From assembly GCA_965637545.1 (NCBI GenBank), contig OZ281499.1:8928001-8992000 (forward strand): 64,000 bases of DNA, written 5' to 3'. The translations under genes were made by a program, and so were the position numbers. The DNA comes from Phallusia mammillata (taxonomy: Eukaryota). Position 1 is the stretch's first letter; each line of letters starts with the position of its first letter. This document shows positions 96 to 59,150 of this stretch, in pieces. Under the pieces are notes generated by a model, which was given only the letters and a program-made list of their open reading frames with translations, had not been told where the DNA came from and made no database searches.

Positions 96-194
96 AAGAC
101 ATGAGCCATATTGGCTAGTGTAGCCATCTAACGGCGCTCAATTTGTTGGAAGTAACAGGCTGAAAAGGCTTGCCTCACCAAGTGTAATCTTTAC

Positions 195-28682: not shown

Positions 28683-31600
28683 ATGGTAACTAAATTAGAC
28701 TCAAGGAGCAGTGACGCTGATGCCCCAAACCCGCACTTGAAAGAGGATGAGCTGTGCAACCTCGTCGGTGAAAAGGAAATAAGTGTTTCGAATTCGGATG
28801 AAAGCTTTGAAAATTTGGAAGTGATACTGGCGTGTCCTTCACTAAAAAGGTAGAAACATTTTTGTTATTATTTGCACTAAAAAAAATGGCAAATAAGGTT
28901 TAATTTTAATGCACCCAAAAGAAACGTTATTGTGTGAATGTGAATGAAGGCCGAAATCACTATATATCTTGAGTAAAATCATCTTAATGCCATGAATACA
29001 TTTGTAAACTAGGTGTATTTGCACCACCATTCTAAAATAGTATATCTTAATTGGGGTATTATCTGAAACGAAACCCGTGATAATAATCACCTAACACACA
29101 TTTTCCTTCACAGAAACGAAATCAGAAAGATTTGGAAGAACCTGATTCTTATATGTCTTGCATTTGTTGGTAACTTTATTGCGTTTAACGGCGCCAGCGC
29201 CCTTCAATCCAGTCTTAATGCCGAGGCAGGACTCGTGAGCGCTTCACTTTCTGTTATCTATGCTGCAATAATTATATCTGCAATGTTTTTACCAGCTTAT
29301 GGTAAGTTTACTATACGTATTTCGGTTGGTACCACAAAACACAGATGCAAAAACATGATAATTTGTATGAAAAGTTGCATATTATCATTTTATCTATCTT
29401 CAGTTGGGTAGCGGACCCCAGGCCATTACCAATTTGCTACCACCAGATGTTTCGCTGCATTGATTTTTTTTAACTTTCAATTCTGTTGTTTTAGTTATTT
29501 TTCAGGAGTTGGTTTAATTATAGTTAGGTATGTCAGATTAAAAACTAACTACAACGTTTTAAATTGCCAATTTTAACGCTTTAAATTGATAACCTGAAAC
29601 ACATTTTTGTGGGCGTTGAGCTTCGGTATTTTTATTGTAAACTGCTCTTGATTCAATTTAAAACGTAGATTAAACAATCAAAACATCGTCCAATCAATTA
29701 AGTAGTTTTCCGGAAAGAATGCATAACAGGCCAATAGGTCACAGTACTGCTCCCTTATGGCAATCTTATCCGTAGCTAAGGTATAAAATACTTTCTGTTA
29801 CCAAAAGGGTGCCTTACTTGTTGCTAGCCACCAACACTTTAATTAACTGATTTCGTTCATTTGGTTGCAAATGATTACAAGCAACAGTATAGCAATTAGA
29901 TTAGGACAATGCAGTGAAAAGCTAATTTAGCGCATAGGCGCAGCAGTTCACACTGGTATCATATCATCAGCCGGACAATCATAAAACAGCAACCTCTAGA
30001 AATACGCAACCCCAGGGAAAAAAGTCGTCCTGCACCAAATATCGCTTTGCTATTTAACGTAGTTTGTAACTGGCAAAATTTTACCATGAACATTCTAATT
30101 TTTCTCTTTTTTAGTAATTGACTGGCTTGGTTGCAAATGGACGATCGTTGTAGCGATTTGCGGCTACGTCACATATTATCTCGCTAATTTCTACCCACAT
30201 TGGGGAACTCTTATACCAAGTTCCATAATCCTCGGACTCTCTGCTGCTCCCCTGTGGTCTGCCAAGTGCACCTACCTCACCACATCTGCTAAAAGGTTTG
30301 TCCTAAAAAAGATCATTTAGTGCAGGGGTGTCTAACGTGCATGCAGCCCACCAAGCCCTCTAATGCGGCCCTCAAACAAAACAAAAATTGTAGTATTTAG
30401 TCAGATTTTTATCCAAATATAACAGTTTTTTAACTATTCAAAGTTGAAGCTATTCATTAAACGGACATTTACAGCTAGAACTTTAATAAAGAAATAAAAA
30501 AAATGTTATGAATAGAAACGATAGTAAACCGTTCCTCTAACTAAAAAAAGCGTTTAGTTTCAGTCAGGGGTGCAGAACTTGCGGCCGTGCGGACACATGC
30601 GGCCACAGAGACGAGTTTGTGCGGCCATGAACATGTTTATTAAAATACATTATATGTACTGGCGGCCGTGACGTAAATAAAACACATTTGCCAAATATTT
30701 TGACTTTCAAACTGCTCTAAACATATTTTGTGGTACTGAAAAAAGTATTACCATCCTAAATAGCCATATGCGTCAGACTTTTTGCGCCTATTGTGTACTA
30801 ACAATGCGAAAAAACAGGTACCACAGGCATCACAATATAGATTATGACGTCATAAACAATTAAGACTGATCTTCACACTGTGCAGCTCAATCTGCGCCAT
30901 CAAGTTGGAAATTAGTCTGGGCTTTTTGGGCGTCAATAGATGGTATACATATGATATAAACCTATTTCTTTACATCTGTAATTTTAAAACAAGGTGAAAT
31001 AAGGATCTGCAATACGGCCGTCGTGGCGAAAAGATTGTGCTGCCCTGGTTAAAGTTTATAAAACTAGATTAAAAATCACATGCGGCCCTTGGCATAATTT
31101 CCAACTGCAATGTGGCCCTCGAAGCCCCATGAGTTTGACACCCCTGATTTAGTGCAAACTGTTTCGAACTATAAGGTCTCATCAGTGCAGCTGGTGACGA
31201 GAGATAGGCCATACGAGCTAATGTAGCCTTTTACGGCACTCCAGTTTGTTTGGAGCAGTAAGCATACCATTCAAATGTATCAACTTGAAAAAAACGGACA
31301 CTTTGTCATTTGTCTAACGGTACTTGATAGACTTGCGAATTCTGTCAGAAGACCTAAACCGTTATTTTCAAACTCTCAATTATTGTTTAGGTATGCGTTA
31401 CTGACCAATGATATCACAGATGCAGTGGTTAACAGATTTTTTGGCGTTTTCTTTCTATTTTTCCAGTCAAGTCTGATTATTGGAAACCTACTTTCCTCGT
31501 TTGTTTTATCAGCTGACAACACAGAAAAACTTGGTAAAGTGTTAATAATGTGAAATTTCGTCTTTGTGGTTTACTACCAACCCGACTAGATATCCAACCC

Positions 31601-33805
31601 GATGTTTATTTTCTCTGCAGAATTTCCCACCTGCTATAACGAGACACTTATTGAACAAATTTGTGGCAAAAATGACTGCCAAGGCAAATTGTCAACTGCC
31701 AATGTCAAATACAACAGCAGTGACTGCTCTATCATTGAACTAGAAAGTTCGGGAGCGTCCAACTCCGCAATCTATATTTTAATGGGTATCTATACTGCCT
31801 CTGGTTTGTGCGGTGCACTTATATCAGCTGTTGGTGTCGACAATATCAAAGTCAGGTGGGCTTTTTACTGTTGAAAATTATTGAACATACTGATTTTTAT
31901 TGGCGGATTTGACAAATTCGAAGAAAGTTGTTTTGTGTTAGTAATGCTTAAATTGAATATGCTTGTGTTTACTTTGAAATGTAATGTTTCTGTTCTTTTG
32001 TTCACACCTAAAAGGCTTAGGCCACATAGTAACCGTTACGGATTTTAACGATACATATCCGCGTACATCTTGTAGATCCCAGGAAACTCGTGGACCGTTT
32101 GCTTTATTAATCGCATCATTTAACCAAATGAAAGACAAGAGACAGCTTTTACTTATTCCTATCACGATGTACAGCGGATTTGAAATGGCATTCCTAACTG
32201 GCGACTTTACACGGGTAAACGATCATGGTAGCAAGTTTAACCTAATCACAAGTAAACCATCTACTGAACACATCATACTTCGATATTTGGACTTTTACAT
32301 GCATGACATAACGCTTTTGTCAGCTTTTATAGGGTGAATAGGGTTTCAGCTGTGCTGACTTTTGATATTTTTTATTCAGTCTTTTGTTACTTGTCCTCTT
32401 GGGGTCAACTGGGTGGGATTTGTCTTCTTTTGCTATGGTGCTTGTGATGCAATTTTCTCACCTCTTGTCGGGGTGTTGGAGAAATTTACTGGACGGATTT
32501 TTTTGTTGACAGCTGCAGCTCTTATCAGTATTGGGGCTATTATCACAATGCAGGTTAATAAATGTCAGGCACTTAAATACGATGTTTTTCTGAACTGGTA
32601 AAAGCATTTGCAGCTTGATTTAATGCTTAATACTTATTTTTAGGTATGGACTCCTTATCCAAGTCAAGTACCGCTGTTCTTTATTCTTTCTGCACTTTGG
32701 GGGATCTCAGATGCTGTGTGGCAAACTCAGCTTAACGGTAAATAAAAAATTATTTAACTTGGTGATGTTATAAGCTTATAAGTTGAATTTCAGTCAATAG
32801 TGTAAAATCATTTTGTGGTATAACAGAAAGTTTGTATTGATCAGTTTAAGAAATGTTATCTTGTGTTGCAGCGTTGTACGGAGTACTTTTCTTTACAAAC
32901 CAAGAAGCAAGCTTTGCCAACTACAGACTTTGGGAATCAGTTGGGTTTGTCGTAGCATTTGCTTATCAAAACTTTATTTGCTTGTCAACAAAACTCTGGG
33001 TTCTGTTGAGTGTTGTTTTTATCGGGATGACGCTGTATTACTATGTTGAGGTAAGAATTTTCATTGAGCGTTAGTGGTAGTGAAATGTAACAGCATCAAA
33101 GTTGCAACACCGTAGTGGATCCGGGTTGGAACATCAACGTTTGTTTTGCCATTTAAAAAAAACGCGGTGTTAAATGTTTAACCTACGAAGGGAGGTGCTG
33201 TTTTTTTACAGTAAAATTTAAACTGAATCATAAAGCACAAAGTTTATGCTATACCAGCGTTGTAGGTCGGGGCGAGTTCGGGCTTGTGCTTGAATCACTG
33301 CCGGATGCGTATCTTGCGATCAGCGCATATATGCTCTGTTAAAGTTATGTTTGTTTTTTCTATCGCCTCTACCAAGAAAAAATGGAAATTTGATGATAAA
33401 AATTCCTTTAAGACAAGTATTGAAATCCTATGTATTTCATTTACTTGATTGTTTAAAGCAGTGGTTCTTAACCTTTTTTCCTTGCTGCACCCCTTTCAAA
33501 TCACCAACCAATTTTCGCACCCCCTTTCAAATCACCAACCAATTTTCGCTCCCCCTTCTGTATATGCTTAAATAGAATATACCTAACTAACCTTAATGAT
33601 TCAGCATCCCCGCACCCCCTAGGAACAGTTCTCGCACCCCTTGGGGGTGCGCGTACCCCTGGTTAAGAACCCCTGGTTTAAAGCGTCTAAGCTTTTGTGT
33701 ATATGTACATAATTCACACAACTTACATTTGTTTGTTTTTAGTATCAAGAAAGACAAAAGATTCCAGAAAAAGGAAAAGTGGCGAAAAACTATCTATCTC
33801 AATAG
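28683..33805 (+). CDS. UNC93A: UNC93A-like MFS membrane protein, copy 3 (complete; shortened C-tail)
   Basis: Exons 28683-28849, 29114-29301, 30115-30295, 31391-31533, 31621-31855, 32076-32214, 32380-32553, 32644-32737, 32872-33050, 33743-33805 (YQERQKIPEKGKVAKNYLSQ*). Confidence 0.9.
30323..31146. mobile_element. hAT-type MITE (outer) in intron 3 of copy 3
   Basis: TIR CAGGGGTGTC / GACACCCCTG; perfect TSD ATTTAGTG (30315-30322, 31147-31154); GCGGCC motifs. Confidence 0.88.
30565..31047. mobile_element. hAT-type MITE nested inside the 30323 element
   Basis: Ends CAGGGGTGCAGAAC / GTGCTGCCCTG; degenerate TSD GTTTCAGT/GTTAAAGT (6/8). Confidence 0.65.
31152..31228 (-). ncRNA. Hammerhead-ribozyme SINE-like element (family HH-A), 3'-truncated
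   Basis: Minus strand GCTGCA-CTGATGA-GACC-TTATA-GTTC-GAAA-CAGTTTGCACT. The 5' half and catalytic core are intact; the 3' strand of stem I is missing. Confidence 0.75.
33459..33675. mobile_element. hAT-type MITE
   Basis: TIR CAGTGGTTCTTAACC / GGTTAAGAACCCCTG; perfect TSD GTTTAAAG. Same family as 58547-58764 in the opposite orientation. Confidence 0.92.
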
Positions 33806-35641
33806 CATAAGAAAGTTCCCTGGACTTGCATTCCAACAATGGCTGATCAAATAAACAGCTGAGTAAATTCGGACACATGCGTATATCCACCTTTTGAAAG
33901 AACTGCTGCAAATCCAATAGCGCCATGTGGTACACCATAATCGTCATTTAGTATGCAAGCAACTTAATTTTTCGAGATTTTTTTGATGGAAAACAGGACG
34001 AACTTATTTCCATGGACAAAAGCAGATCAAGTTTTTAGCTTCAAGGAATTCCTTTTTTGTAACTGTTTTGATATACATCAGCTGTTACGAAAAGCTTTTC
34101 CAGTGGTAAATCCTCGTAAATATTTCGAAGTATAGACATGGTTTTGCTAGTAACGTGAAATTACCGTGCATAAATGCGTTATTTGTCGCTTACCGATCCA
34201 CTTTCGTTATTATTGACGAAGACGGTATTAGCTGCTACGGCGGAGAAAGCACAATACACAATTCGGTTTTTATTAGTCCTTCTTAGTACTACAGTAATCC
34301 TGAACACAAAAGCGTTTTTCCTGGAATTAACAAATCTACACCAGCTGAAAAAACGTCAAGAAGTCATTTGCAAAAAAACAAAAAAAACAAGAAGTTTAAC
34401 TTTTCACTTTCCACGAAATAACCACAAGCTAATTACATAATTATGACAGAAAATTTTTGCTCGCTATAGAACTATTACGAAGTGCACTTGATTGCACATA
34501 CAAATTTCTGCCGCTATCGTAACATAACATATATATCTACCATTAATAATTAGTTTATTAGCCGCTAAGTTAAGCGGAATATGGTGATAATAAAAAGTTG
34601 GAGAGAGCATGGACTTCAAATAAATATTTTTTGTAAGATGCAGATTTGGATAGAAATCACATACACGGCTTCTAAATAGGGAAGCAGTGCCCTCAAGTGA
34701 CTAATAGTAAGTTAAGTGAGCTTAATCTGGCCGGTTGGTGAGTTTTATTACAGAGTTTTTGGAATAAATCAGGAATTTCAGCTTAGTAAAACATACTTAA
34801 TGGCCGTACACTTTTTGACCCTTTGGTGTTAGATGACTTTTTTGTAAAAGAGAAATATTGCACGGGTGCCTAACGTATAATCCTTCGCATACTCCTTACA
34901 TTATTACTTTTGTTGGTCACAAAAATACATTACTTTTGTTAGTCACAAAATGCATAGTATCAGTCTTAAAAATCCTTGCAAGTTTTTAACTCATAATCAT
35001 TTTAAAGGTGCTTTTGAAATTATCATTATGGAGTCCAATAAAAGTCCCAACCGGTGCACACAACTAAAGTTAATTATGGATTGTAACAATACTTTCTTCA
35101 GTCGCAAGTTGGTACCGAAAAAAACCCACCGAAATGAAACCCTATACAACCCTTCGAGCAGATAAGGTTTTGGGTGGCAAGCTGACGAGTTTGTTATGTA
35201 TACTAAACAAATACAGACAGGCCTAGACTAATTCCAGCAAAACGAAAGTTAAAGAAAATGAGATATTCCACTATTATAGGAATGAAACAAACAAAAAACA
35301 ACTTCACTTTGTCTTTTCCTTTGTGAGAATTTTTATTTTGGTTAAAGTAAGAAAGATGACTACTGGCACTTTTACCTATGACTGCGCGGTATTCAGCGCT
35401 GTAGTAAATCCGGGTTGTAAGTATCAATTGTTATTACAACCGCAGCGCCGAATGTCTAACCAAAACAGGGCCCTGGTTTTGTTACAGAAAAACTTGTGTT
35501 CTTGAAGTGACTCTTGTGAAGCATATAACATAAGATTTACGCTACACATGGCAGAGGTGTAAAACATGCCATTACGAGGAGACGAAAACACATATTATGT
35601 CCAAAGTAAGAAGTAACAGATAAGATAGTACGAAAGTACTA

Positions 35642-36088
35642 TATATTGGGGAGACTGGAAGGTCACTCAACGCCCGCCGAAAAGAACATCAACGGGATGT
35701 TGCCAACAGCGACGCGAAGAAGTCGGCCCTGTCCAATCACAAGGCCACCGTATTGATTTTAATGCGGCGTCTGTTGTGGCCCGGGAGCCTGACTACAGGA
35801 AAAGACTATTTCTTGAGTCATGGAATATTCACCAACGGGGCAACACAATGAACATCAAAACACATGTGATGCTTCCAGCGTGCTACAGGCACCTGCTTAA
35901 AGATTAGAGGGCCAATCATTTGTTATCGCGCGGTGTTTTCGTTGCGTTGTTACGTGCTTGCGTTCCATTCTTTTTTCCTTTGTTTATCATGCACTGTACT
36001 AGTCGCATTCAGTGTTATTTACCCTGATGAAGACGACCTGTATAGGACGTCGAAACGTCGGAATAAAATCACATTTGCCAGAAGAGCT
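35642..36088 (+). mobile_element. 5'-truncated Penelope-like element: GIY-YIG endonuclease C-terminus plus pLTR
   Basis: YIGETGRSLNARRKEHQRDVANSDAKKSALSNH [frameshift] GHRIDFNAASVVAREPDYRKRLFLESWNIH...YRHLLKD*, then a hammerhead at 36012-36073. AAAGTACT at 35633 and 36100 is a possible TSD. Confidence 0.85.
36012..36073 (+). ncRNA. Minimal type-I hammerhead ribozyme of the Penelope pLTR
   Basis: CTGATGA (36024-30), stem II GACG.CCT-GTAT-AGG.CGTC, GAAA, palindromic minimal stem III ACGT, GTC triplet, stem I TTATT(TA)CC / GGAATAA. Confidence 0.75.
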
Positions 36089-36841
36089 CTTTAAACATAA
36101 AAGTACTGCACGTTGCACACTATTAAATAGGTATAATACAAAGCTACGCTTTTGAAACAAAATAGCACTCGCATGTCTGTGCTTAAAGAAATGAGAAAAA
36201 AAAGAAACAGTGCTGCCTCTGCCTGCGACGCAATCAGTTTTACAGACAGCGCGCTAAGAAAACAAAACTTTTTTTCAAAATAAATAAACATATAGTTCAT
36301 ACAAAAGCGAATGTACGATTTTCGACTAACAATAGTCATTTAATATGCATGATTACTGAACGTTGTACAGTAATAAAAAAGATCACTTTACAGCTGTACC
36401 CTGGCTTTAAAACAAACTTGGTACATTTTGTGTTCGACATAAAATAATAAAGAATTATTTTATCTCAAAATAATTAATCTATTGCCAAAGCAATTGTGTT
36501 TCTGCGCCTATAAGATACTGCATGTTAAGAGTAGTTAACGATTTGGAAAAATAATCAACTGCTTCTTTTTTAAAGCATGTAAAAGTGCGTACAAGTACAG
36601 TCCACATGAAAACGAAGGTGCCTATAGGTAGAGTCTAAAAGCCAACATTTTGTGCATTCTTTACTTTTGGTTATAAGTTAAATATAGTGTATACAATTGA
36701 GGAGAGCTACAAAGCTTATAGACACAGTCACTAGCCGCTCTAGCTTTTACACATGCAAAATTTTCTGCATAAAATTTCTACCCCTTCATACGCTATTGCC
36801 GTTTTCTACTCTTTCCTTTGTTTTGGCACTTATACTGGTCG

Positions 36842-39800: not shown

Positions 39801-40680
39801 CAAGCCTAAGTATTTTGTGTTCGCAGTACAGCACTGTGTAAATATTTGGATTCAAAATGTTAATTCCACGATGGAGTGTATGAGTTAATATTTCACTACT
39901 GCAGCATCCATGCGCTACTCGGCATGTACTCATTCTTCGTTTGAAACCACATTACTGAGCTATTTTCTCAATAAAGTCAAATCATTACGTGCCCCAGTAT
40001 TTCAGGCACAATTGGCAAATACCATAGTGTCATTTTTACAAAAGTTATCATTTAGTATGTAGCAATCTTTCCTAACACCAACACTACATTGTCAAGCTTA
40101 CCGTAAGTAGGTAAAAACATTGAGGAGATAATCAACGTGGCATAAATAATAGAAAGTGAAGCTGTCCCAAGCCCTGCCTCAGAATTGAGACTGGATTGAA
40201 GGACGGAGGCGCCGTTAAAAGCCGTGAAATTGCCAACAAATGCAAGACAGATGATGATCAGATTTTTCCAAATCTTTTTGGTCTCTTTTCTGAGGTAATA
40301 TATGTATTTGGTAAACGTCGGAATAAAAATACATTTGCCAGAAGAGCTATATTAACTTGATATTATGCCTGACAGCATGTATTTGGTAATATTGACATTT
40401 ATTGTCTTCTTGTAAATTATGTTTTAAAAAACATAAACATATTTTTCTACTTATTGTGGGTCAAACCAATATCCAAAGTTGCAAGATGTGTGCAAAAATA
40501 GATTTGTCTTTACTTTTTAAGACAAGGACTTGCCAATATGACTTCCAGATTTTCAAAGCTTTCAGGTGAAATTGAAACTTTTATTTTCTTCTCATCAGCG
40601 AGATTGCAAAGTTCATCTTCTTTCGAGTGGGGCTTATGGGCATCTCCGTCATTGCTATGCGAGTCAGCTTCAGTTTCCAT
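36842..40680 (-). CDS. UNC93A: UNC93A-like MFS membrane protein, copy 4 (complete; shortened C-tail)
   Basis: Exons 40680-40514 (METEADSHSND..SFENLEVILASPCLK), 40289-40102, 39667-39487, 39306-39164, 38918-38684, 38252-38114, 37767-37594, 37467-37374, 37278-37100, 36892-36842 (YQERQKIPKKERSEKL*). Confidence 0.9.
40315..40376 (+). mobile_element. 62-bp extremely 5'-truncated Penelope pLTR insertion in intron 1 of copy 4
   Basis: ACGTCGGAATAAAAATACATTTGCCAGAAGAGCT matches 36055-36088. Flanked by 13-bp TSD ATGTATTTGGTAA (40302-40314, 40377-40389). Confidence 0.75.
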
Positions 40681-41794: not shown

Positions 41795-42897
41795 TCTTTT
41801 CACGCCTGAAGTGCAACACAAAAGAATGTACATAAACCAGTTCTACAACTCGACAAACACTTGTGACGTCACAGTCCTGTCTTGAAAAGAGTATCTCACC
41901 TAGGATAATATGCAAGATTATCAGTGTTTGCTAGATCGTTCGGGTTTTGTAGGTTTGACTCTCATGTCGTGGGTTGCGTTTATGACACTAATGTCATTGC
42001 TATTAGCGCAAAACTTTTTGAGCAATTGTAACAATTATGTTCGGTTGTGTTAAATGTTTAATGAACCCTTATGCGATACAACACTCTTGTGTAATCCTGC
42101 AGAAATTACATAGAAGTTACTTTAGTAGGTTAACTGTCAGAAACCGTGTTCCCGTTTCTTGAATCAAAGATATTTCTGCGTATATGTACAGGATAAAACG
42201 TTGATTGTTGTCAACTGGTGAATATAACAACAAATCTAAACTATATCTTTCGTTATAATAGCCCAACAAAACGTTTCAAAATCCATTGAGTAACCACAAT
42301 GTATGATAGCAGGCACGCAATACAGATTTACCGCAGATATCAGATGCACGATTTAAAAACAACAAAACAGTCTTTGCTTTGACTCTAAAGAAGAGTGTGT
42401 TTAGTTTAATCTGATTGGTATCTTCAACTGTTCTCATCGTGCCTTTAACTCTTTATTTTAGAATTGTTGATAGGGCAGCGGAATGGCTGTACGACTGAGT
42501 GGTAAAATTAAAATTAATGCATCGATCAAAACCACATGAGCATGTTGTCACTTTCTTAAAAACATGGTTGTTTCAAGAATTCTAATGCCGTCTTTAGCAA
42601 CCAATAGGTTTTTAATGACTGCAAAAGTTCCTTGTTGTTGTGTAGCTGCAGACGTTTTGACGGGCAGGTAAAGTGGTTAAAGTCGCCTTTTTGAAGCATA
42701 GACATTATTTGATTTGTTTGGTTTGGACCAACCACAAAACGATTACAACATTTAATGCAAATTCTGTACGAGGCATCATTCCTTCTATTTCAAACTGTTT
42801 AAGTAAATATTTCAAGTATCCTTAACTCCTCAAGTAACAAGTAAAAAAACGGATTTATGTAGACAAAGAAGTAAACAGAACAAACAATGCATTTACT

Positions 42898-44000
42898 GAG
42901 GCTGAATGCAGTTTATCCGAGCATATCTTTCACACAAGAACTAGAGTTACACAACACCATCCATTACTTAGATGTGCTCGTAACGAATACACCCAATGGC
43001 ATAGTCACTACCACCTACCGCAAGCCTACCCACAGTGGACTTTACAGCAAGTGGGACAGCTTTGTACCCCTTCACCATAAACGCAACCTCGTTAACTGCC
43101 TCATAAAAAGAGCATATAACATCTCCAGTTCCTACAAAATCATGGACCAAGAGTTTCGAACAGTAAAATCCATGCTTGCCTCCAATGGATACCCTGTCAC
43201 CTTCCTTGACGGGTGTGTTAAAGGGTTTCTCAACAGATGTCATCGCCCCACACTTCCATCTTCACCCAAACGATCGGAAACCACACTATTGGTGACCATG
43301 CGCCTCCCCTTTATAGGAACCACATCTTACAATATAGCGCGTGAGCTCAAGGGATTTGTGAAACGCACAATACTCGATGTGGAACTACGGGTTATCCACA
43401 AACCGACAAAAATTGGCAGTTTCTTTTCTATCAAGGACCGCCCTTGCAACAACCTCCGCTGCAGTGTTGTTTACAGGCTGACATGTTCGTGTGGGTCCTC
43501 ATATATTGGTGAGACGCAGCGAAACTTAATAACTCGAATAAAAGAGCACCAGACCAACGAAAAATCGGAAGTGTGTAGGCATCTCCAGACTAACCCTATG
43601 CATAGGGTCAACTTCACAGAACCAGAAATATTGGACGCAACGTCAGATCGGATTCGTTTGTTTATTCTGGAGTCGCTTCTTATCCAGCAACATGACCGGG
43701 GCTGAACGTGGACACAACTTCGATGCCCCTGCGGCTTTTTAACACCTAATTCACTGGTTTTATCGTTATCTCCATTTTGTCGGCAACCTTTTATCAGCGT
43801 GACGCAGTTGATTAAACTTTTCTCCTTACTTTTTCTGTATATAAACGCGCTTGTTTCCACTTGTGCATTACATTTTCACTGATGATGACAATAGTTTTGT
43901 CGAAACGTTTGTTTTAATAAAATGAATACGTTTTACTCTACGTCGCTGGCAATTTGCTTTTTATTAAAGCTGTTATTCAAGTCCGTGTCTTGTGTACCTA
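42898..44000 (+). mobile_element. 5'-truncated Penelope-like retroelement (RT C-terminus + GIY-YIG endonuclease + pLTR with hammerhead)
   Basis: ORF 42887-43705: HYLDVLV, YRKPTHSGLY (RT thumb), VVYRLTCSCGSSYIGETQRNLITRIKEH (GIY-YIG), ILESLLI; terminal 1-nt frameshift. Perfect 12-bp TSD AATGCATTTACT (42886-42897, 44001-44012). Confidence 0.93.
43866..43925 (+). ncRNA. Minimal type-I hammerhead ribozyme of the Penelope pLTR
   Basis: CTGATGA (43879-85), stem II GACAA-TAGTT-TTGTC, GAAA, stem III ACGT, triplet GTT, stem I CATTTTCA / TG..AAAATG. Confidence 0.72.
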
Positions 44001-44504
44001 AATGCATTTACTTTTGTACGAAACACACATACACTCATGTCTGTTCCATTGCAGTAACGTAAACTGAAGTATATCACGGAAATGTAGTGGAAGATTGGCA
44101 GGAAGTCAAGTTCAGTTTTGCCACTGCCAATATTCACCACCATATTGTTATGTACAGTTCGCAGAAATAATGTTAGTTCTTAGTACAATTAAAACAGCAA
44201 CCTTTGTAATAGGAAGTAAACAAAAATTGTTGTATTAAAAAATGAATGCAAATCAGTGCTGGCTCCAATAATACGAGTAAAAACACGTTTGTGTGCACCA
44301 TAAATTGAACCATAAACTTTTGAGTTTTAGCTGCCAGCTGGAACGACACAGGGTTAAGTTTCTTTGGTGGATTCTGTAACTTGACATGACTTAAATTTCA
44401 ATAGCTTTGTTATCAAAAAGATGTTGCATTGGGACAGTGTTTCTCAAAGGTATGGACCAACTAAGACACAAATTGAGCTTCTAAAAGTGCATTTTATCAT
44501 CAAG

Positions 44505-45132
44505 TAATTGCCTGGCTTAGTTGCAAATCGTTGTAGCGATTTGCGGCTACATCACATATCCTCTCGCTAATTTTTATCCACATTAGGAAACTCTTATACC
44601 AAGTTTAGTTATCGATGAACTCTCTGCTGCAACCTGTGGTCGGCCAAGTGCACAAAACTGTTAAGTTATAATTATACAACTGTTAGATGTAGGTAATATT
44701 TTGTTTGTCACCACTATCAGTCTCTGTTTGTTATTTCCTGATCAGAAGTTTATTCAGAGTTTAGCTTTAGCCAAAACTCATATTTCATAATGCTTATTAT
44801 TTTCTTGGCAGTATGTCCTACCTGCTACAACAAAACATTTATTGAACAACAATGTGGCAAAAGTGACTCCCAGGGTGACTTGTCTGCAGCCAGATTGAAA
44901 TTCAACAACTATGAGTGTTCAATGTAAAAGCATATAGAGCCAATAAATGATAAGCTGCAGACAGTGCACACTGTTTCGACCTATAAGGTCTCATATGAGT
45001 GTTCAGTTTCTGATCTGAACATTTCGGGACCGACTTATTCTACAATCTATACATTTTAATGGGAATTTACACTGCCAGCGGATTCTTTGGGGCGTTTGTA
45101 ATGGCTGTTGGTGTCGATAACATTAAAGTCAG
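44505..45132 (+). pseudogene. UNC93A: Decayed seventh UNC93A-like copy (exon 3-like and exon 5-like remnants; exon 4 absent)
   Basis: 44505-44653 matches exon 3 with deletions and a TGG>TAG stop in HWG. 44812-45132 matches exon 5 (ends GTCGATAACATTAAAGTCAG|gt as in copy 2) with a frameshift and a 72-bp insertion. Confidence 0.87.
44922..44993 (-). mobile_element. HH-A hammerhead element, 5'-truncated insertion with 12-bp TSD
   Basis: Minus strand TGA-GACC-TTATA-GGTC-GAAA-CAGTGTGCACTG-TC-TGCAGC-TTATCATTTATTGGCTCTATATGCTTTTACAT. TSD TATGAGTGTTCA at 44910-44921 and 44994-45005. Confidence 0.85.
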
Positions 45133-46896
45133 GTACGGAAATTTCTTATTCTTCAAAACAATAAAAATGTAAAATAAAAAAAATCGATATCTATGTACAT
45201 GATGAACTGGCAAATCACGAAGTATTCCGAAGAGTTAGTATGAGGGTGAAGTTTTGTTGTTTGGCTTTAACGTCCTTGAGTGTCCCTTAATGGGTTTGAT
45301 GACAAACAGCCCTATGGTTTTTATCAGATGGCAGATACAAAAAAGACTACGTTTGTTTGAACAATGACTTAGTTTTAAGAGCTGACAATTCAAAACCCTT
45401 TTTTGGTGACTTTTAAGCTCGCTAAATTGCTGATTCGGTTGGTTGTTAACCCGATAACAGCGTTTTTTGAACTCGTTTTCATTGTTCATAGACTCTCCAA
45501 CGACTTGGTCTACGAAGGTTACTACAACAAATTCGCATCGAAACTCGATAAAATGCAAATCAAGTAAACTGAAGGGTCAAATAAGATTCCTTCCTTCACA
45601 GTCCATGACAATGTTTCTTAAACAAACAAAAAATATCGTTTTTTATCAAGTGATTGCCTACTAGCTTGTCTGCTGGGACGACGATCAAAGTTGTTAATGT
45701 ATATACAACACAATATTTGCGCTTTTGGATGCTTGACTGGTGCATTTTTGCCATTTTTACGACTTCTATCACTATATTTTGAGTTTTTGTAATTAACACC
45801 TTTAGTCAAGGCTTTATATTGTATCGGAGACCACAAATCAACACCTGATTAAAAGTATGTTGATGTCCAAAAAAAAAAATCTCAACGTATTTGATACATA
45901 CAAGATTGGGAACTAATGTTGCATACCACCCAAATAAAGCGTAATACTATGCTGTTTTTGTAGTTGTGTGACAGAATGACAAGAAAACCAATAAAACCTT
46001 TTCAAAAGTGAAAATGTTTGTAATTTTGCATACCGGCCTTTAAATGTCGAGTTTTATAATGCATATTTTCAACACGTTTTAACTTATTAATCGGATTTTC
46101 GCAACTCTGATATCACATTTATTATCAGTGTTGTATTTATAATAAACAAGAATTCAATGAAAGAAAGTGATTGATTCAGCTACGTGCGAAAATGTTTTCA
46201 CATTTGTGCAAACAAGATTTGTAAACAGAGCAACCAAACATTGCAAAATACCATTACTGATAAAGTGGGATCGAAGTTAGTATATAAGCTACCAAGTAAA
46301 TACAATCAAAACTGAATCATTCCTTAGCGTCAGGTGATCAATTGTCGCATAACGCGAGAGAATATAAACGCAGGATCAATTGAAACAACACTGCACTATT
46401 CATTATCACAACTGAAGTTGTATTAAGTGCTGGCCTTGAGTTCAGCGATTGAGTTTGTTTTGCGGCCATAAAACGTTTTCAATGCTCAGGCCCCTTGTGC
46501 AAAGATTTACTTTTCGATTCACAACAAGCTTCGTTGCGTTGCACTGCATTCGCTGTGAGCAACGAGGTGCAGTAGTTGGTTTTATAGCTCACCCTTTAGA
46601 GATTATTACTCACTATTTCGAGTTTTATTATCTTTTGTAAGGCACACATATAAAGATCAATATCACGTAGGCACTCTTCAGTTTCTGTTTAATGCACAGC
46701 TTAGAGAATAGCAAAATTTTGTCAGAATTTGACAAAGCATATCGGAAGGCTTCTGGCTTGTTGACTGCTAGCTTTTTAGGTGCACAAAACGACGTTTACG
46801 CCTTGAGAAAGTTTCAAAAGGTTTTAAGGTTTATGCAAAGCATTATGTTATGACACTTTCTCTTTCGCAGTTTGTTCCTTTTAAATTTGTATCAGA

Positions 46897-50967: not shown

Positions 50968-51062
50968 AAATAAGCCGCAGACAGTGCACACTGTTTCGAT
51001 CTAAAAGGTCCTATTAGTGCAGCTTGTGAAACAAACTATAGGCCGTATTAGCTGGTGTAGCA
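50968..51062 (-). ncRNA. HH-A hammerhead element, full span but core-mutated
   Basis: Minus strand GCTGCA-CTAATAG-GACC-TTTTA-GATC-GAAA-CAGTGTGCACTG-TC-TGCGGC. CTGATGA is changed to CTAATAG. Confidence 0.75.
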
Positions 51063-52035
51063 ATGGCTCTCCTGTTTGTTGGAAGTCACAGACTGAAAAC
51101 CCATGCCTCACCAACTCTGTTCCATAACTAGGCATAAACTACAGGCCAGCGTTTTCTGAATTTCGCAGTCTTAAAACACAAATTGAATTGTAATGGTATA
51201 ATGACGAGCTAGATAGATTTTCAGAACAAATAAAACAATTATAAGGTTCCAGAGTCGTAATGCACATCCATATCTCGCCAGCAAGCCTTAAAATATGAGA
51301 TGATACATGCACTCGTTAAGAATAGTCTTTTTCGAGCCAAACAAATACCTGTATAGGCACATTTTGAAACCCTCGATGACTTTCCATAGAGAGCCGCAGC
51401 CCAATTTAGAAATCTTCGTGACTGATGTAAGCCGCTATTAAAAATCAAAAATATTAGTTTTTCTAAATATGACAATATTGTTAAGTTCGTGTTGCTTGTT
51501 AATACAAACGTCAACATGCCACAACTGCAACAATTTACAAGTCTTAGTCATCTAGATTCTAGAATCTAGATGATGAAGAGTTACAAAACCTGATTCAATG
51601 ATGAAGGCTATTTTCAATCGCGAGGTTTCGCAGCTGTTTCTTGATTCTGTGTCTCTTATTTAAATGTTTTCAATTTTATCAATTATATGTTCAGGACAGA
51701 AATAAACACAATACAAGGCAACATATCGGGCAATTTAAGGCTGCTTGCAACGCAGACAAACTAAAGTAACGTTTGAAACAAAATATCCGGTAGACTCCGC
51801 CAAATAACTTTCATATCCTATGCAACCACGGACCCTTACAGCTCTGTCTATAAAGTAGCATAAATTTCGCGTTCAAAAACAAAAACTAAAATGGTATTAC
51901 TGTACTGAGTCAGTAAGCAAATGGAATGTAACCACAAATATTGCTTTTCAAAATTACAGGGGGATTTACACATATATTGCAGGCATACACATAGAGTAAA
52001 AAGAAACAGAATCTCTCTGCAAACCAAATAAAGCA

Positions 52036-52107: not shown

Positions 52108-53304
52108 AACGCAAACATATAAGATCACCAGGCAGGTTGTCCTTAAAGTAAACATAGAGATAGCCAGCTGGCCGAAATTCCTAACTTATCACCGACATCT
52201 TTCCTATATAAGCCACAATTTTTTCGGTAACTGTTCATTTTGTAGTAAACGGTTGGTCGAGCTAGGAGGTTAAAGTTAGAGCAAGGATGCCAGATCGTAC
52301 TATATTTAGACAACGTTTTAGTAAGTTGTATGCTGACCAACATAAGAACATATAGTAGTACACTTACCGAGATATCATAAACCAAACTGTTCAGTGCTGT
52401 ATAATATACACTGTATATGCTACTCGATGTTATTCGCATTTTATTTTGGGGATACTTAGTTTTTATAGCCTATTTCATATTCTCGAAACTGAATCGCGTT
52501 TATATCAAGCTAGCCAGTACAAGCAAATGCAAGTGACAGGTTAGTTTTCTAAAACTATTGTTTTTGGAAGAAGATATATTATGCGCACGCTAATGTATCA
52601 AATTACTTGATTAGACCAACAGTGGATGGCGCTCTTTGCTGCCGTCGGGGCAAGATTGTCCGTCAAAAAACTTGGTAGTCATATGACCCCCGGTCTCTAC
52701 ACACTAAACACTAGGCATCATAGATTTTGCATGGGGCATGAACATTTGATTAAAACAAAATATGTAGGGGGCTGCGTCAAGGTTTATGATTAGTTAGATC
52801 AGGATGATCAAAACCGCATGTAGCTTTTGTGCGGCCCGAGAACAGTATCTGCATATGAATCATCGAATCGATTGCAGTAAATAATACGCTAATCATCAAG
52901 TAGAAGGTCATTGTATATCTATTGTTAACCAACAAATTCTCTTTGTTGCGAACATCGGAACTTACAGGAGCTTTAAAACAGTTGTTACAGAGTGCTAGCA
53001 GATGTGCTTTGTGGTGATAATATTTAGGTCCTAATATCTTACATAAAGTCAACTAGAACAGAAAATTCAGTCATTGGATACAAAAGTATTTCTCCTGTGC
53101 GTTTCGCAAACCGTTAGTTAAACCCTAACGTGGCCTTCTATTTTTATAGTCTTGGACCACCATGAGTTAGCTTATATCAAAAACAGGTCCTAGCTGGTTG
53201 TTTCGAGATGGCCAAGATCCCACTAAACATCAACCCATACCCTTGATTTTTTTCTCTCTTATAGAGGTATATTGTTTTCTTTTAAATTTGTATGCAATAA
53301 TAAT

Positions 53305-56300
53305 ATGGAAGAAGGTAAAAGGAGCGATGTCAGCGAGGAATCGAAGTGGGATGGGGATATTGATGAGCTGACAAACATTAAGAATAATCCTATCAGAAAA
53401 AAGTAAGAGAATATTGCAAAAATAATGTGCAGACAATGCACATTTTTTCGACCTACAGGGTCTCAATAGTACAGATGGATGGTTACAAGAGGTAGGCCTA
53501 TCCTTGTCACCAGCTGCAATGATGAGTCCCTGTAGGCCAGGGGTGGGCAACCTTTGTCACTGTGAGGCCAAATACAATTGCTATGATTGGATCGCGGGCC
53601 GCACCTTTATATAACACAATGTGATCTTACTTCGTTGCATACCAAAAATGCCTTACTACAAGAAACATTCGCATTTGATTCTAACAGCACATTGTCAGGT
53701 CGCAGAAAAACAGCATCAGGCCCACTAATCTGCTCAAAAAATTTTAATAGTTGGACTTGTTTGCCAGTACATTTGAAATCCAAGTGTCTCTGCGGGCCGC
53801 ACAACTTTAATCAAAGGGCCGCATGCGGTCCACGGGCCGCAGGTTGCCCACCCCTGCTGTAGGCAGTGGTGGGATTCAAATTTTTGGTTAGCCGGTTTTT
53901 TCACAAAAGTCATATTTTTTAGCCGATTCTGTTACAAAAAGTCCATTGACAGTAACCAGTAATGCTCACCAGTTTCCTGATCTCATAAAGTTTCGTGAGA
54001 CGGTTCTATAGAACCGGTGCGAACCGGCTAAATCCCACCACTGCCATAGGTCGAAACAGTGTGCACTGTCTGCAGCTTATCTTTTTTTGGCTTGATGCTT
54101 TTTCATTGCAAATGTATATATTCGTTTTTACTGCGATTAGGTATAGTTTTGGTATGGCAAGTCTGTATCATTATGCGCAAACCACATGCTAATGTTTTAT
54201 AAAACGATTTTGCAAATATTGGCTAATAATTTTTTTGATTGTTCATGATTCAAATACAATTAATTATCCTGAAATCAATAAACAGATTCTTGTAATTCTT
54301 CTAAGTGAATAAAAGTTCTTCATATTATCTGAAATATGTGTACAGAACCGAGATTAGAAAGATCTGGAAGAACCTGATCCTCATCTGTATTTCATTTGTG
54401 GGAAACTTTACGGCTTTTAACGGTGCTTCCGCTCTTCAATCAAGCCTTAACTCAGAGGAAGGACTTGGAACAGCTTCGCTTGCGATCATTTACGCCTCAC
54501 TTATTATATCGGCGCTGTTCCTTCCCACTTATGGTAAGGCTTATCTCTGATTGAAGTAACATAGTGGTAAGATTATGTCGGTTCATGTAGATCTGGTTTT
54601 GGAAACGTAAAGACCTCCCCGAACCGGTTGTTTAGTCGTAGTATTTAGGCTTATAGGTCAGTTGGATCGGATTGAAAGCTGGGTAGCTAGGTCATGTACT
54701 TACAAACATGGTTGTACTCTTGAGATCGACTAAGGGCACTTGTTGTGAATATGTTTAACATTACATTACAGTAAAAACTTACTAAAAAAAGTGAAAAACA
54801 ACAAATGGAACTTTATTGCAGGAAAACACCCAAAAGTCACAATGGTATTTGATCTTTATTTGTACTGAAAACCTAGAGGCCGTTAAACTCCATATAATGT
54901 CAGTAACGTTCGGGTTTCTAAAGAACTTTGAAAGTGAATGTCCTCACAAACTTTTACCATCCTGTAGTCACAGTAACAGAGTTACGAGTCTGACAACGCT
55001 TTTGTGTTTGCGAACAAAATTGCAGTTTAACGATTTGATGATTGTTTGGTTCCGCTGTTTTACTCCAAAGGCAACAGATTAAATGCTGATAAAGTTTGTA
55101 AAAGAAAGTAAAACTATTTTAGTACTAGGACAAACAAATAATTCTGAAGAAATCGTAAACCTCTGTTAGTGTTTTGATATAACCATAGTTACTTAGCGGG
55201 TAAAAATTTACTGGCGTTTGGAATTCAAACACCTGTATCTGTTCTTTCGCAGTCATCAATTTTCTCGGCTGCAAATGGACGATCGTTGTAGCGATTTGCG
55301 GCTATGTCACTTATCCTCTGGCCAATTTTTACCCACACTGGGGAACTCTTATTCCAAGCTCCATATTTGTTGGACTCTCTGCTGCCCCCTTATGGTCAGC
55401 TAAATGCACTTACCTTACTACAAGTGCCAAAAGGTTTGTAAATAAAAGTAAGATTTATATGGAATATTATGTGTATTAGGTTCTGGTGAAGATACTAAAG
55501 TATAAACTCAAATAACAAAAGTTTGCTAAAATCCGAAAGATGACGTAAAGAACATAGTTATTTTAGTGTATGGAACTGAATTAGAGGTTAGTGAGTAAGT
55601 TTTTCAGTTAGTTTACTGTTATTTTTTTATAAAACCTCAGGCTATACCCCAACCCTAATGTCTCTCATTGTCAGCATTTTCACACATAATTTCGTCAACA
55701 TTTCAAAATTTCAATACGGATTCGAACCCAGTATGCTCCCAAAGAATCCCGATCACGGTTTTTAAGACTGTATATGGGTCAGGCGCGCTGGACCATTCGG
55801 CCAAGTTCCAACCCATTTTCAGCAATTTTTTTAGCTTAATTCTTAATGCTCTTTACGCCACCTATCGTTGTTTCACAAACTTTTGTGATTTGAGTTCTCA
55901 CCTTAGTACCTCAACCTTGAATTCTATACCGTAAATATATATGAGTTCAGATGTGTATGCCCAATCGCTAACCTTTGGTGCTAACTCATCTTATTCTGAT
56001 TTAGTTGTAAAGTATCGTTAAGATTTTCAATTATGTTGAAAATGCATTGAGGTCATGTTTCATTTAGGTACGCATTTTTAACGGATGAAAGTGTGGATGC
56101 CATGGTAAACAGGTTCTTTGGAATTTTCTTCCTATTCTTCCAGTCGACGCAGATCATTGGAAACCTCATTTCATCTTTCATACTTTCAGCTGACTCCACT
56201 AACAATCTCGGTTAGTTAAACTTGAGCTTCTTCAGGCAATAGAAAAACCTAGTTATTGCTTCATGATGTAGAATTCCCCACATGCTTCAACGAGACCTAC

Positions 56301-59150
56301 ATTGAAGAAAATTGTGGTAAAAATGACTGCCAGGGTGACTTGACGGCAGCTAGAATCCAGTATAACAGCAGCGAGTGTCCTGTGAGCGACCTCAATAGTT
56401 CAGGACCATCCAACTCTACCATCTACACACTGATGGGAATATACACCGCTATTGGTTTCAGTGGTGCACTTCTCATGGCTCTTGCGGTGGATCCCATACA
56501 AATAAGGTTTTGCTATAATCTGTAACTTTTGGATAATGAAGAATTACTTTGGTGTTACGCATATTTTGATTGACAGAAAGAAAGAAACTCGTGGACCGTT
56601 TGATTTGCTCATTGCAACAATATTTCACATGAAGGATAAACGACAACTGCTGCTAATTCCTATCACAATGTACAGTGGCTTTGAGCAAGCTTTTCTGACT
56701 GGAGACTACACCAGGGTAATAGGCCTACACCAGTGGTTCCCAAACTTTTTAATATTTTTTTCTAAACGGTCCCCTTGCCATTATTTCGGCTCGCGGTCCT
56801 TAAGCCTAAATGTGTATTTCATAAAAACAAAAGTTGATTGCAGGATTTTAGCCAGTTGTGCAAAATTGCGCATAATAATCATCCAAGGACAGCATGTGAC
56901 ATCACAAACAGGACAAAAACATTACGATTGTGCGCGAACAATTGCATTTATTATAGTTGTCATTCAATAAAGGCCATTGTTTAGCAATGGAGACAGTCGA
57001 TTCTTAATTCTACTTTGATTTAAACTTATTTAGTGGCACAAACTGACGCCAAATAAGATTATAGAATTACTTCAATCGCCTCGCGGTCCCCTCAAAATTG
57101 CCCCACGGACCCCAGTTTGGGAACCGCTGGCCTACACTAACACTGTACATGATTTATGATTAGTTTTAGTAAATTGAGGTGTTTATGGATGCTTTTGTAA
57201 AGAACTTTACGAAACCTCAGGAAAAATCATTACATCCACCGTTAAATGACCATTTCCTCCAACATTTTTAGTCGTTTATTACTTGCCCAATCGGAGTGAA
57301 CTGGGTTGGATTCGTATTGATTTGCTACGGTGCCTGCGATTCGGTATTCTCTTTGCTGTTCGGTGGGGCTGAGAAGTATGTTGGAAGGTGGCCACTTTTT
57401 ACTGGAGCAACATTGATCAACCTTGCCCTTATAATTACCTTCCAGGTAATCATAATAACATTGATCCTATTCCACTGGTCTAGTCTTTGCACGTTTGGTA
57501 GTGTAGTAAATGTTAATGATTTTTAGGTCTGGCTGCCCTATCCCAATGAGGTAGCTCTTTTCTTTGTTCTTCCTGCTCTATGGGGGTTGGCGGATGCTGT
57601 ATGGCAGACCCAGCTTAACGGTAAGTTACAAATATGGTTACAAGTTAAACCCGGCACTGTTTTCGCTGCATTTCTTGTTTTATGATAAGCTGCTGACAGT
57701 GCACACAGAAGTACCAACAGTGCAGCTGATGAAAATACATAGGCCGTATTGGCTATAGTAGCTCCATCTAACGGTGCAGCATCTAACGGTATTCTTGTTT
57801 TCAATCCAAGAAACTTCCGTAATATTCTTGAAAGTATACTTGGCGGATATGATGTTATTGTTTTTTAGGCTTGAAAGTGTCCTCGTAAGAAACACGTGCA
57901 GTTATCCCTATTTTTTGCAGCTCTCTACGGAGTACTTTTCGTAACCAATCAAGAAGCAAGTTTTGCCAACTACCGGCTTTGGGAGTCAATCGGCTATGTG
58001 ATTTCATTTGGATATCAGAACTTTATCTGTGTTTCGGTCAAACTCTGGGTGATGCTGTCTGTTCTTATCGTTGGCATGGCACTTTACTACTACGTTGAGG
58101 TAGGCCAGTTTTTAGTCGTGATAAACAAGTGTTCCCTTTTCAGTTTGGGGCTACAGCGTGCATGTAATGTCGCTGATTGGGGATACACAAAGATCTCGTA
58201 TTTGTCTGCAAAGGTGAAAAATAGAGGGGGCATGGATCAAACAGCAGTTGTGCAGTAACGATTGGTCGGGTACAAAGAACAATCAAAGCATGCAGTGTTA
58301 CTTTTAGTGGAAGTTGCCCAAATGTCCTAAGCAACAGATTTTTAACCTATGAATAACTCGCGTACCATCGACGTCTTTTCATCGCCTTGTAGCACCCAAA
58401 CCCTGCTTGGGTGGGTAGACCAATAGCTATAGGCCTATTCTTCTTGACTAGGCTAGCATATTTCTAAAACCGACAAGGTTAGCAATTCCAAAGGCATCGT
58501 CAAGACATTTTGGACGAGTATTGTCCAAAACCATAGCTAATTAGTTCAGGGGTTCTTAACCAGGGGTGCACGCAGCCCCAAGGGGTGCGAGAACTGTTCC
58601 TTGGGGTTGCGGGGAGGCTGAATCATTAAGGTTGGTTAGGTCTATTATATATAAATACAAAAACCCAGCGGGGTGCGAAAACTGGTTGGTGATTGGAAAG
58701 GAGTGCGAAAATTGGTTGGTGATTGGAAAGGGGTGCAGCAACGCAAAAAGTTTAAGAACCACTGAATTAGTTGGTGTTGGGCCAATTGGGTTGCATTTCA
58801 TAATCTGACTTGACTTACGTATAGCACAAAGCCACCACCATAAACACTCCGGTGTAACACTAATGGTACGCGTAGTACAGGTTGAGAACCATTGCTCTGT
58901 CCAGGTGTACGACCTGCAGTTTTATTTCACGTGCACCTAAGTAAGTATTTCCTTCGCCGTTTCAAACTGTAAATTTTCCAGGCGTGTTATTTACCTTTCT
59001 TCATAATTTTAGATTTTGGAAAGGAAGACACCCAATCGGACGTCAGCAATCAACGACGAAGAAAACAGAAAGGACAACATTTCTTCTATCAGTAGCAGGA
59101 GTAGATATGACAGTGGGGTTGACAACGTGGCCTTTGCGGGGGAACTTTAG
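53305..59150 (+). CDS. UNC93A: UNC93A-like MFS membrane protein, copy 6 (complete)
   Basis: Exons 53305-53402 (MEEGKRSD..WDGDIDELTNIKNNP), 54346-54533, 55253-55433, 56068-56210, 56272-56506, 56577-56715, 57272-57445, 57527-57620, 57921-58099, 59013-59150 (..GVDNVAFAGEL*). Confidence 0.9.
53538..53856. mobile_element. hAT-type MITE
   Basis: TIR CAGGGGTGGGCAACC / GGTTGCCCACCCCTG; perfect TSD CTGTAGGC. Confidence 0.92.
53864..54043. mobile_element. hAT-type MITE (CAGTGGTGGGATT TIR)
   Basis: TIR CAGTGGTGGGATT / AATCCCACCACTG; flanks CTGTAGG / CCATAGGT (degenerate TSD). Same family as 61775-61922. Confidence 0.85.
55718..55814 (-). mobile_element. tRNA-derived SINE family A copy (intron 3 of copy 6)
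   Basis: Minus strand TTGGCCGAATGGTCCAGCGCGCCTGACCCATATAC...GATCGGGATTC...GGGTTCGAATCC; matches 1-95 and 8706-8770. Confidence 0.72.
56731..57129. mobile_element. hAT-type MITE
   Basis: TIR CAGTGGTTCCCAAAC / GTTTGGGAACCGCTG; perfect TSD GCCTACAC. Confidence 0.9.
57683..57790 (-). ncRNA. HH-A element, degenerate (stem II and GAAA region deleted)
   Basis: Plus strand GATAAGCTGCTGACAGTGCACAC...CAGTGCAGCTG...ATAGGCCGTATTGGCTA..CCATCTAACGG is colinear with the other HH-A copies. Confidence 0.65.
58547..58764. mobile_element. hAT-type MITE
   Basis: TIR CAGGGGTTCTTAACC / TTTAAGAACCACTG; perfect TSD AATTAGTT; reverse-complement sibling of 33459-33675. Confidence 0.92.

What the first reader, a model, noticed from the sequence alone, without database searches (positions are those of the whole stretch)
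31152..57790. Dispersed ~130-nt retro-mobile family built around a type-I hammerhead ribozyme (retrozyme-like SINE, HH-A)
Seen: six related copies (31152, 44922, 50968, two in 53427-54081, 57683) plus a flank-only fragment at 96-140. Overlapping them gives a consensus with a perfect hammerhead core: AGCTGCA-CTGATGA-GACC-TTATA-GGTC-GAAA-CAGTGTGCACTG-TC-TGCAGCT. It has a GUC triplet and a self-complementary stem III. Flanks from different copies (AGCCAATA upstream, TATTGGCT downstream) close a further 8-bp helix beyond an internal loop in stem I, the architecture that allows loop II/stem I tertiary contact. One copy has a 12-bp TSD and 5' truncation. Established: short non-autonomous hammerhead-bearing elements (retrozymes) and Penelope pLTR hammerheads occur in metazoans. 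Inference: this is a distinct non-coding family, unrelated in sequence to the two Penelope pLTRs here, probably mobilised by Penelope RT. No individual copy in the window is fully intact.
Basis: partly seen in the sequence, partly recalled or inferred. Interest (0 to 1): 0.85.

Follow-up and report, generated by a model that had tools for sequence, protein, structure and literature searches.

The report
Penelope-spread repeat carrying a hammerhead ribozyme
This animal genome holds scattered, decayed copies of a short repeat whose consensus is a self-cutting hammerhead RNA and whose ends show it was pasted in by a Penelope retrotransposon enzyme; it is a new example of a known kind of element and carries a sequence tag that points to its likely helper.

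Summary
The repeat is real: six insertions (seven arms), at least 175 nt long. The majority consensus gives an exact type-I hammerhead (chance about 1e-4) of the canonical class: helices of 7, 4 and 5 bp, no extra base after A9. No copy is intact, the core is not more conserved than the rest, and covariation is weak (two pairs, one arm). Penelope-type insertion is well supported: three TSDs (8, 10, 11-12 bp), one head-to-head inverted insertion with a palindromic junction, and two 3'-end classes (about +11 and +37 from the cleavage site) that match an ORF-coding Penelope fetched as control. New here: the 3' end carries a terminal motif (GGC..G(C)TTTT) shared by six ORF-linked Penelope families, including one in the window. 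No Pol III boxes, no tandem copies and no defined 5' end were found, so neither SINE nor retrozyme membership is shown. Best reading: a non-coding, retrozyme-like Penelope parasite (0.58). Rival: truncated pLTRs of an unsampled autonomous Penelope (0.35). New member of a known kind.

The parts
96..181 (-). Copy c0: upstream (5') part only, no ribozyme core; begins about 11 nt inside an intron of a UNC-93 gene and abuts an internal piece of another repeat
31151..31262 (-). Copy c31: the only copy with CUGAUGA and GAAA both intact; one helix II mismatch; homology stops 3 nt before the cleavage site; intronic, antisense to the host gene
30323..31146 (.). Later hAT-like MITE (nested) inserted at the 3' side of c31, 8-bp TSD; a possible tail remnant follows at about 30300-30314
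44922..44994 (-). Copy c44: youngest (about 2% from consensus), 5'-truncated inside the core, long 3' end (+38), inserted in an exon of a partial UNC-93 copy; TSD at 44910-44921 and 44994-45005; cleavage position 44960
50968..51114 (-). Copy c50: longest arm, three core changes, short 3' end (about +10); true 5' end unknown, no TSD found
53421..53498 (-). Arm c53a: left arm of the inverted insertion, short 3' end (+11), two compensatory pairs, core broken; left TSD at 53413-53420; palindromic junction at 53493-53500
53495..54104 (+). Arm c53b: right arm, long 3' end (+34 to +37), split in loop II by two MITEs (53538-53856 and 53864-54043); without them it differs from the consensus ribozyme at one core base and one helix II base; right TSD at 54105-54112
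57682..57791 (-). Copy c57: internal deletion across helix II and GAAA, short 3' end (+13), 10-nt duplication at the 5' junction; TSD at 57672-57681 and 57792-57801; intronic, antisense
11275..11308 (-). Possible very old fragment (weak)
   Evidence: nhmmer E=0.03
44922..44941 (-). Penelope-type terminal motif at the long 3' end (also at about 54088-54104 on +)
42887..43966 (+). PLE1: Penelope 3' fragment with GIY-YIG ORF remnant, minimal hammerhead at 43879 and the same terminal motif; a representative of the likely helper clade, not shown to be the helper itself
35641..36099 (+). PLE2: second Penelope 3' fragment, frameshifted, minimal hammerhead at 36024, 8-bp TSD, lacks the terminal motif (comparison only)

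Best explanation
HH-A is a short non-coding retroelement that parasitises a Penelope/Poseidon-type element. Its master RNA holds a canonical type-I hammerhead followed by a Penelope-like tail. Steps: (1) transcription from an unknown promoter or by read-through (inferred; no Pol III boxes). (2) The helper's RT-GIY-YIG protein recognises the tail, nicks AT-rich DNA and starts reverse transcription inside the RNA at either of two sites, about 11 or about 37 nt downstream of the cleavage site (end positions shown; enzymology inferred from PMC11167929). The template must therefore span the cleavage site: uncut, religated or circular RNA (inferred). (3) Synthesis stops early or folds back at a near-palindrome, giving 5'-truncated and head-to-head inverted insertions with 8-12 bp TSDs (shown). 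(4) Inserted copies decay roughly neutrally and collect MITEs (shown). The ribozyme probably cuts after GUC as a monomer in the master RNA and may make unit-length or circular RNA from tandem masters elsewhere in the genome (inferred, untested). A duplicated heptamer allows an inactive fold of nearly equal energy, which could keep some templates uncut (computed, function inferred).
For: Exact core and helices from majority consensus, chance about 1e-4; hammerhead fold within 0.2 kcal/mol of the best fold. Three TSDs against a null of 0.002 or less each. Inverted pair with a junction palindrome and a tail on one arm only, as described for Penelope (PMC3846280, PMC8557442); the same end geometry in ORF-coding locus L136 (+11 and +39). 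Tail scores like a member of six ORF-linked Penelope tails, p=0.002-0.013, with a 10-nt exact match to L138. For non-autonomy: all seven ORF-linked families examined have minimal hammerheads with an extra base after A9 and no helix III, and T-rich upstream regions (T 37-51%, GC 25-42%) versus T 27%, GC 49% in HH-A; canonical type-I motifs in animals are typical of retrozymes (PMC4209133, PMC7229834). No Penelope coding remnant lies next to any copy. All seven arms are under 180 nt of shared sequence.
Against: No natural 5' end is demonstrated: the apparent shared start of c0 and c50 is only where c0 ends beside an exon. Known upstream sequence (99 nt) is shorter than the 116-129 nt stop-to-core distance of the window's Penelopes, so an ORF could lie just beyond. 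A PLE2-like family also leaves a 62-nt insertion with a 13-bp TSD. No tandem copy. Only one Penelope clade was sampled in depth. The tail motif was noticed before it was tested, is T-rich, and one training family (L003) scores at background in leave-one-out. No copy outside the window was found.
Confidence: 0.58

Rival explanations
1. HH-A is the 3' end (pLTR plus optional tail) of a third, autonomous Penelope family with an unusually canonical hammerhead; the window samples only heavily 5'-truncated copies and solo pLTRs.
For: Every insertion feature (TSDs, inversion, two end classes, tail motif) is what an autonomous Penelope leaves. Tiny fragments and ORF-less pLTR hammerheads are common here: 40315-40376, 16882, 63670. 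No 5' boundary shown. Xenopus retrozymes are close to pLTRs (bioRxiv 10.64898/2026.07.22.740005). A short match to PLE2's helix II apex (p=0.0015 uncorrected).
Against: Ribozyme class and upstream composition differ from all seven ORF-linked families seen; none of seven arms reaches coding sequence, while both ORF-linked families in the window do; 2.3 kb upstream of c50 has no Penelope similarity.
Confidence: 0.35
2. A retroposed repeat whose hammerhead is a dead relic: the ribozyme was inherited but did not cleave in the masters that produced these copies.
For: No intact copy; core changes 12.7% versus 17.6% elsewhere, p=0.38; hammerhead mutants do not impair Penelope insertion in vitro (PMC11167929); competing fold of equal energy.
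Against: The reconstructed consensus is perfect at all core positions and all 16 pairs, which needs selection in the master lineage; neutral decay after insertion explains the broken copies; two compensatory pairs in c53a, P about 0.03-0.06.
Confidence: 0.05
3. The consensus is an artefact of stitching unrelated fragments or of gene duplication in the UNC-93 cluster.
For: The window is a cluster of duplicated genes; Rfam gives only sub-threshold hammerhead matches.
Against: Copies sit at non-equivalent positions of the paralogues and in both orientations; c50 alone spans 149 nt of the consensus; most ribozyme columns have depth 5-6; independent TSDs.
Confidence: 0.02

Closest known systems
Metazoan non-LTR retrozymes (Cervera and de la Pena 2020, PMC7229834; review PMC7761336)
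   Same: Canonical type-I hammerhead with 4-bp helix II, non-coding, GC below 50%, TSDs longer than 4 bp, co-occurrence with Penelope elements
   Different: No tandem units seen; copies are truncated dispersed fragments; helix III is 5 bp (usually 1-2); it has a recognisable Penelope terminal motif, whereas PMC7761336 states that retrozyme repeats show no conserved motif pointing to their helper; circular RNA untested
Penelope/Poseidon pLTRs and tails (PMC4209133, PMC3846280, PMC8557442, PMC11167929)
   Same: 5' truncation, head-to-head inversion with palindromic junction, 8-12 bp TSD, optional tail on one arm, terminal motif shared with the PLE1 clade
   Different: Canonical rather than minimal hammerhead; upstream not T-rich; no ORF attached in any copy; tail difference about 25 nt versus the 30-40 quoted
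PLE-derived retrozymes of Xenopus (Li, Clavereau, Pollet, bioRxiv 10.64898/2026.07.22.740005)
   Same: Same proposed relation: hammerhead repeats as non-autonomous Penelope derivatives, with dispersed monomers
   Different: That study defines families by tandem arrays and covers mainly vertebrates; here homology to Penelope is confined to the last 20 nt
Schistosoma Sm-alpha SINE-like hammerhead repeats (described in PMC6765202; structure from own knowledge)
   Same: 4-bp helix II with a loop ending in UA; weak Rfam alignment over this part
   Different: No Pol III A or B box found; no sequence homology tested beyond the core

Membership tests
Type-I hammerhead ribozyme (canonical) | Core CUGANGA, GAAA, NUH with helices I-III, open ends in helix I | tested here: met
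   Met by the majority consensus only, not by any single copy
Type-I hammerhead ribozyme (canonical) | Helix I about 6 bp, helix II 4 bp, no extra base after A9 | tested here: met
   7 and 4 bp, no extra base; contrast with the PLE motifs; definition in PMC4209133
Type-I hammerhead ribozyme (canonical) | Loop II / stem I tertiary contact | tested here: inconclusive
Type-I hammerhead ribozyme (canonical) | Rfam hammerhead model at gathering score | tested here: not met
   Only sub-threshold matches for the broken copies, E 0.35-0.39; the consensus could not be submitted
Type-I hammerhead ribozyme (canonical) | Self-cleavage | not testable with these tools
   Needs in vitro assay
Non-LTR retrozyme | Head-to-tail tandem units of 150-450 bp each with a hammerhead | tested here: not met
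   None in the window; the rest of the genome was not available
Non-LTR retrozyme | No protein coding | tested here: inconclusive
   No coding similarity in or next to copies, but the 5' end is unknown
Non-LTR retrozyme | TSD longer than 4 bp, GC below 50% | tested here: met
   8, 10, 11-12 bp TSDs; upstream GC 49%
Non-LTR retrozyme | Expressed as circular monomers | not testable with these tools
   Needs RNA data
Penelope-mobilised element | 5' truncation, inverted head-to-head arms, optional tail on one end, TSD | tested here: met
   c53a/b, c44, c57; control L136
Penelope-mobilised element | 3' terminal similarity to an autonomous Penelope | tested here: met
   p=0.002-0.013 against six PLE1-clade tails; five other pLTR tails at background; modest strength, noticed before testing
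Autonomous Penelope (pLTR of) | RT plus GIY-YIG ORF upstream | tested here: inconclusive
   None next to any copy, but known sequence may stop short of where an ORF would end
Autonomous Penelope (pLTR of) | Minimal hammerhead with extra base after A9 and no helix III (metazoan norm) | tested here: not met
SINE (Pol III) | Internal A and B boxes or tRNA/5S/7SL head | tested here: not met
   No boxes, T4 run at position 16; no similarity to the tRNA-like repeat at 9913; a head beyond the known 5' part is not excluded

The most novel reading that the evidence does not exclude
HH-A is a chimeric non-autonomous element: a monomer-active canonical hammerhead with a built-in on/off refolding switch, joined to a short Penelope terminal motif that is the cis signal for the helper RT. 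It would be a direct sequence link between an animal retrozyme-type RNA and a named Penelope clade, and would define the minimal signal for Penelope mobilisation in trans.
Probability: 0.25. Interest if true: 0.65.

Novelty: new member of a known kind. Interest (0 to 1): 0.4.

Why it matters
Which retrotransposon moves animal hammerhead repeats is an open question; Penelope elements are the favoured but mostly circumstantial candidate (PMC7229834, PMC7761336). This family shows Penelope insertion signatures on a canonical-hammerhead repeat and a short terminal motif shared with one Penelope clade, which gives a concrete test of RT recognition. Literature searches found no report of such a family with Penelope in ascidians, if the host is one. 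The class itself is known, the copies here are dead, and nothing suggests a host function.

Tried and rejected
Outside copies: exact-pattern scans of viral, metagenome and GTDB contigs gave nothing or chance matches; a generic core pattern returned unrelated phage hammerheads; phage BLAST empty. Ten window ORFs are absent from the protein collection, so this genome could not be extended. 208 kb of related animal contigs hold no HH-A. The PLE2 piece found no homologue. The organism could not be named: sample ids are not in the paper library. Rejected: a shared 5' start of c0 and c50 as proof of a defined 5' end; unequal ages of the two inverted arms (11 vs 7 private changes, p=0.48); the distal helix as a feature conserved in Penelopes; similarity of the upstream region to PLE1 (p=0.06 to 0.2); an open frame through the tail (broken in c53b, expected by chance); the 17-nt match at 16665 (E=0.15). 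One paper (PMC5785218) was not held. The window has no N. No contig looked human.

Full report
Context. The window is animal DNA (37% GC, no N) holding a tandem cluster of eight-exon UNC-93-like genes and a partial copy, MITEs and Penelope fragments. The closest exon matches are unnamed host contigs in marine metagenome assemblies. I take the host to be an ascidian, but that rests on my recollection of two JGI sample numbers and is unverified.

Observation. They are six insertion events: c0, c31, c44, c50, the inverted pair c53a/c53b, and c57. They lie at non-equivalent positions of the paralogous genes, so they are not products of gene duplication. After removing three later MITE insertions identified by their own TSDs, the majority consensus is 175 nt with depth 5-6 across the ribozyme. 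It has the exact core, a GUC triplet and helices of 7, 4 and 5 bp. A looser descriptor fires about once per 4 Mb of window-like random sequence. The isolated motif folds as a hammerhead; in the whole consensus the hammerhead fold is 0.2 kcal/mol from the optimum. The competitor arises because a heptamer covering the end of helix I and the first core bases is repeated in the 3' strand of helix III.

State of the copies. They differ from the consensus by about 2-26%. Core positions change at 12.7% and others at 17.6% (p=0.38), as expected for neutral decay after insertion. Of 16 pairs, two show compensatory change, both in c53a (P about 0.03 by simulation, 32/500 shuffles). This is weak support. 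Rfam gives only sub-threshold matches. The three core-bearing copies inside gene bodies (c31, c44, c57), and c50 just past the last mapped exon, are antisense to the host gene, and the one sense copy lacks the core. That fits selection against intronic self-cleavage, but n is too small.

How it was inserted. Three events have TSDs: 11-12 bp (c44), 10 bp (c57) and 8 bp around the whole c53 unit; the null for 8 bp or more is 0.002. The c53 unit is head-to-head, joined at a palindrome, with the long end on one arm only. This is the arrangement described for Penelope in PMC3846280 and PMC8557442. The 3' ends fall in two classes, +10 to +13 (c50, c53a, c57) and +34 to +38 (c44, c53b) after the cleavage site. 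A fetched ORF-coding inverted Penelope, L136, ends at +11 and +39 after its own hammerhead. PMC11167929 explains such optional tails by two internal RT start sites and reports a preferred ATT nick motif; ATT lies at both long-end junctions here.

The tail motif. Tails of six ORF-linked relatives of the window's PLE1 share GGC, a short spacer, then G(C)TTTT near the terminus, predicted as a small hairpin in several. Both long HH-A ends carry it 4-5 nt from the end. Scored against those six tails, HH-A gives p=0.002 (random), 0.009-0.013 (T-matched) and 0.004-0.009 (shuffled), while PLE2 and four other pLTR tails are at background. I noticed the match before testing it, and one training family fails leave-one-out, so the strength is moderate. 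Its upstream partner prefers a local hairpin whose stem is kept in c0, c31 and c57 while the loop varies. The distal helix is possible (p about 0.02 for an 8-nt complement) but not established.

Autonomous or not. All seven ORF-linked families inspected have minimal hammerheads with an extra base after A9 and no helix III, and T-rich upstream sequence. HH-A has neither feature and matches the canonical class that PMC4209133 and PMC7229834 associate with retrozymes. No Penelope coding similarity adjoins any copy. Against this, the 5' end is unknown, the known 99 nt upstream of the core is shorter than the 116-129 nt between stop codon and core in the window's Penelopes, and a PLE2-like family left a 62-nt insertion with a 13-bp TSD. 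Small size alone therefore proves nothing. I put non-autonomous at 0.58 and unsampled autonomous pLTR at 0.35.

Comparison and verdict. It works like a Penelope-mobilised element (well supported) carrying a retrozyme-type hammerhead (consensus level; cleavage untested). It fails the tandem criterion for non-LTR retrozymes within the window and the promoter criterion for SINEs. A 2026 preprint already argues that animal retrozymes derive from Penelope pLTRs. A second dispersed canonical-class hammerhead family turned up in an unrelated sample (L137, L135), so such families are probably not rare in these animals. New member of a known kind; the helper-pointing tail motif is the part worth following, since PMC7761336 notes that retrozymes lacked one. 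Interest 0.4.

Noticed in passing
window 191-58104: Tandem cluster of six UNC-93-like genes in both orientations plus a partial copy at about 44490-45135 whose exon is disrupted by c44; a lineage-specific expansion
   Followed up: partly
window 16882 (-) and 63670 (+): Two further Penelope-type minimal hammerheads with no ORF remnant nearby; at least four Penelope-like 3' ends in 64 kb
   Followed up: partly
window 40315-40376: 62-nt insertion of a PLE2-like tail, truncated inside its hammerhead, with a 13-bp TSD
   Followed up: yes
window 53538-54043 and 30323-31146: hAT-like MITEs with 8-bp TSDs inserted into HH-A; in c53b the first hit the helix II hairpin and the second inserted into the first one's TSD
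   Followed up: yes
L137:430-480 (+) and L135:16798-16857 (-): A different dispersed canonical-class type-I hammerhead family (6-bp helix I, palindromic helix III), both copies with core changes, in ENA sample ERZ25067590
   Followed up: partly
L003, L136-L140 and window 43943-43963: Terminal motif shared by tails of one Penelope clade across several animals; not found described in the papers read
   Followed up: partly
window 36032-36046 versus HH-A helix II: 11 of 12 matching bases between PLE2's helix II apex and HH-A's helix II and loop (p=0.0015 uncorrected); ancestry or convergence unclear
   Followed up: partly
window 9913-9988: tRNA-like sequence (Rfam 46 bits; ARAGORN calls Ser-GGA), probably the head of a tRNA-derived SINE; flanking pieces recur at 21040 and 52079
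   Followed up: no
L134:11584-11750: Penelope relative whose pLTR hammerhead core looks atypical and escaped the descriptor
   Followed up: no
L138, L140: Penelope hammerheads with U3-A8 in place of C3-G8, a natural covariation of the core pair
   Followed up: no
window 60124-60426 (-): WD40 exon resembling the end of a PEX7-like gene (name from own knowledge; Pfam hit weak)
   Followed up: no
window 6328-6692: 128-bp tandem repeat, 2.8 copies, no hammerhead
   Followed up: no
window 26145-26235, 51539-51582, 55490-55911: Long hairpin or inverted-repeat elements, probably MITEs
   Followed up: no
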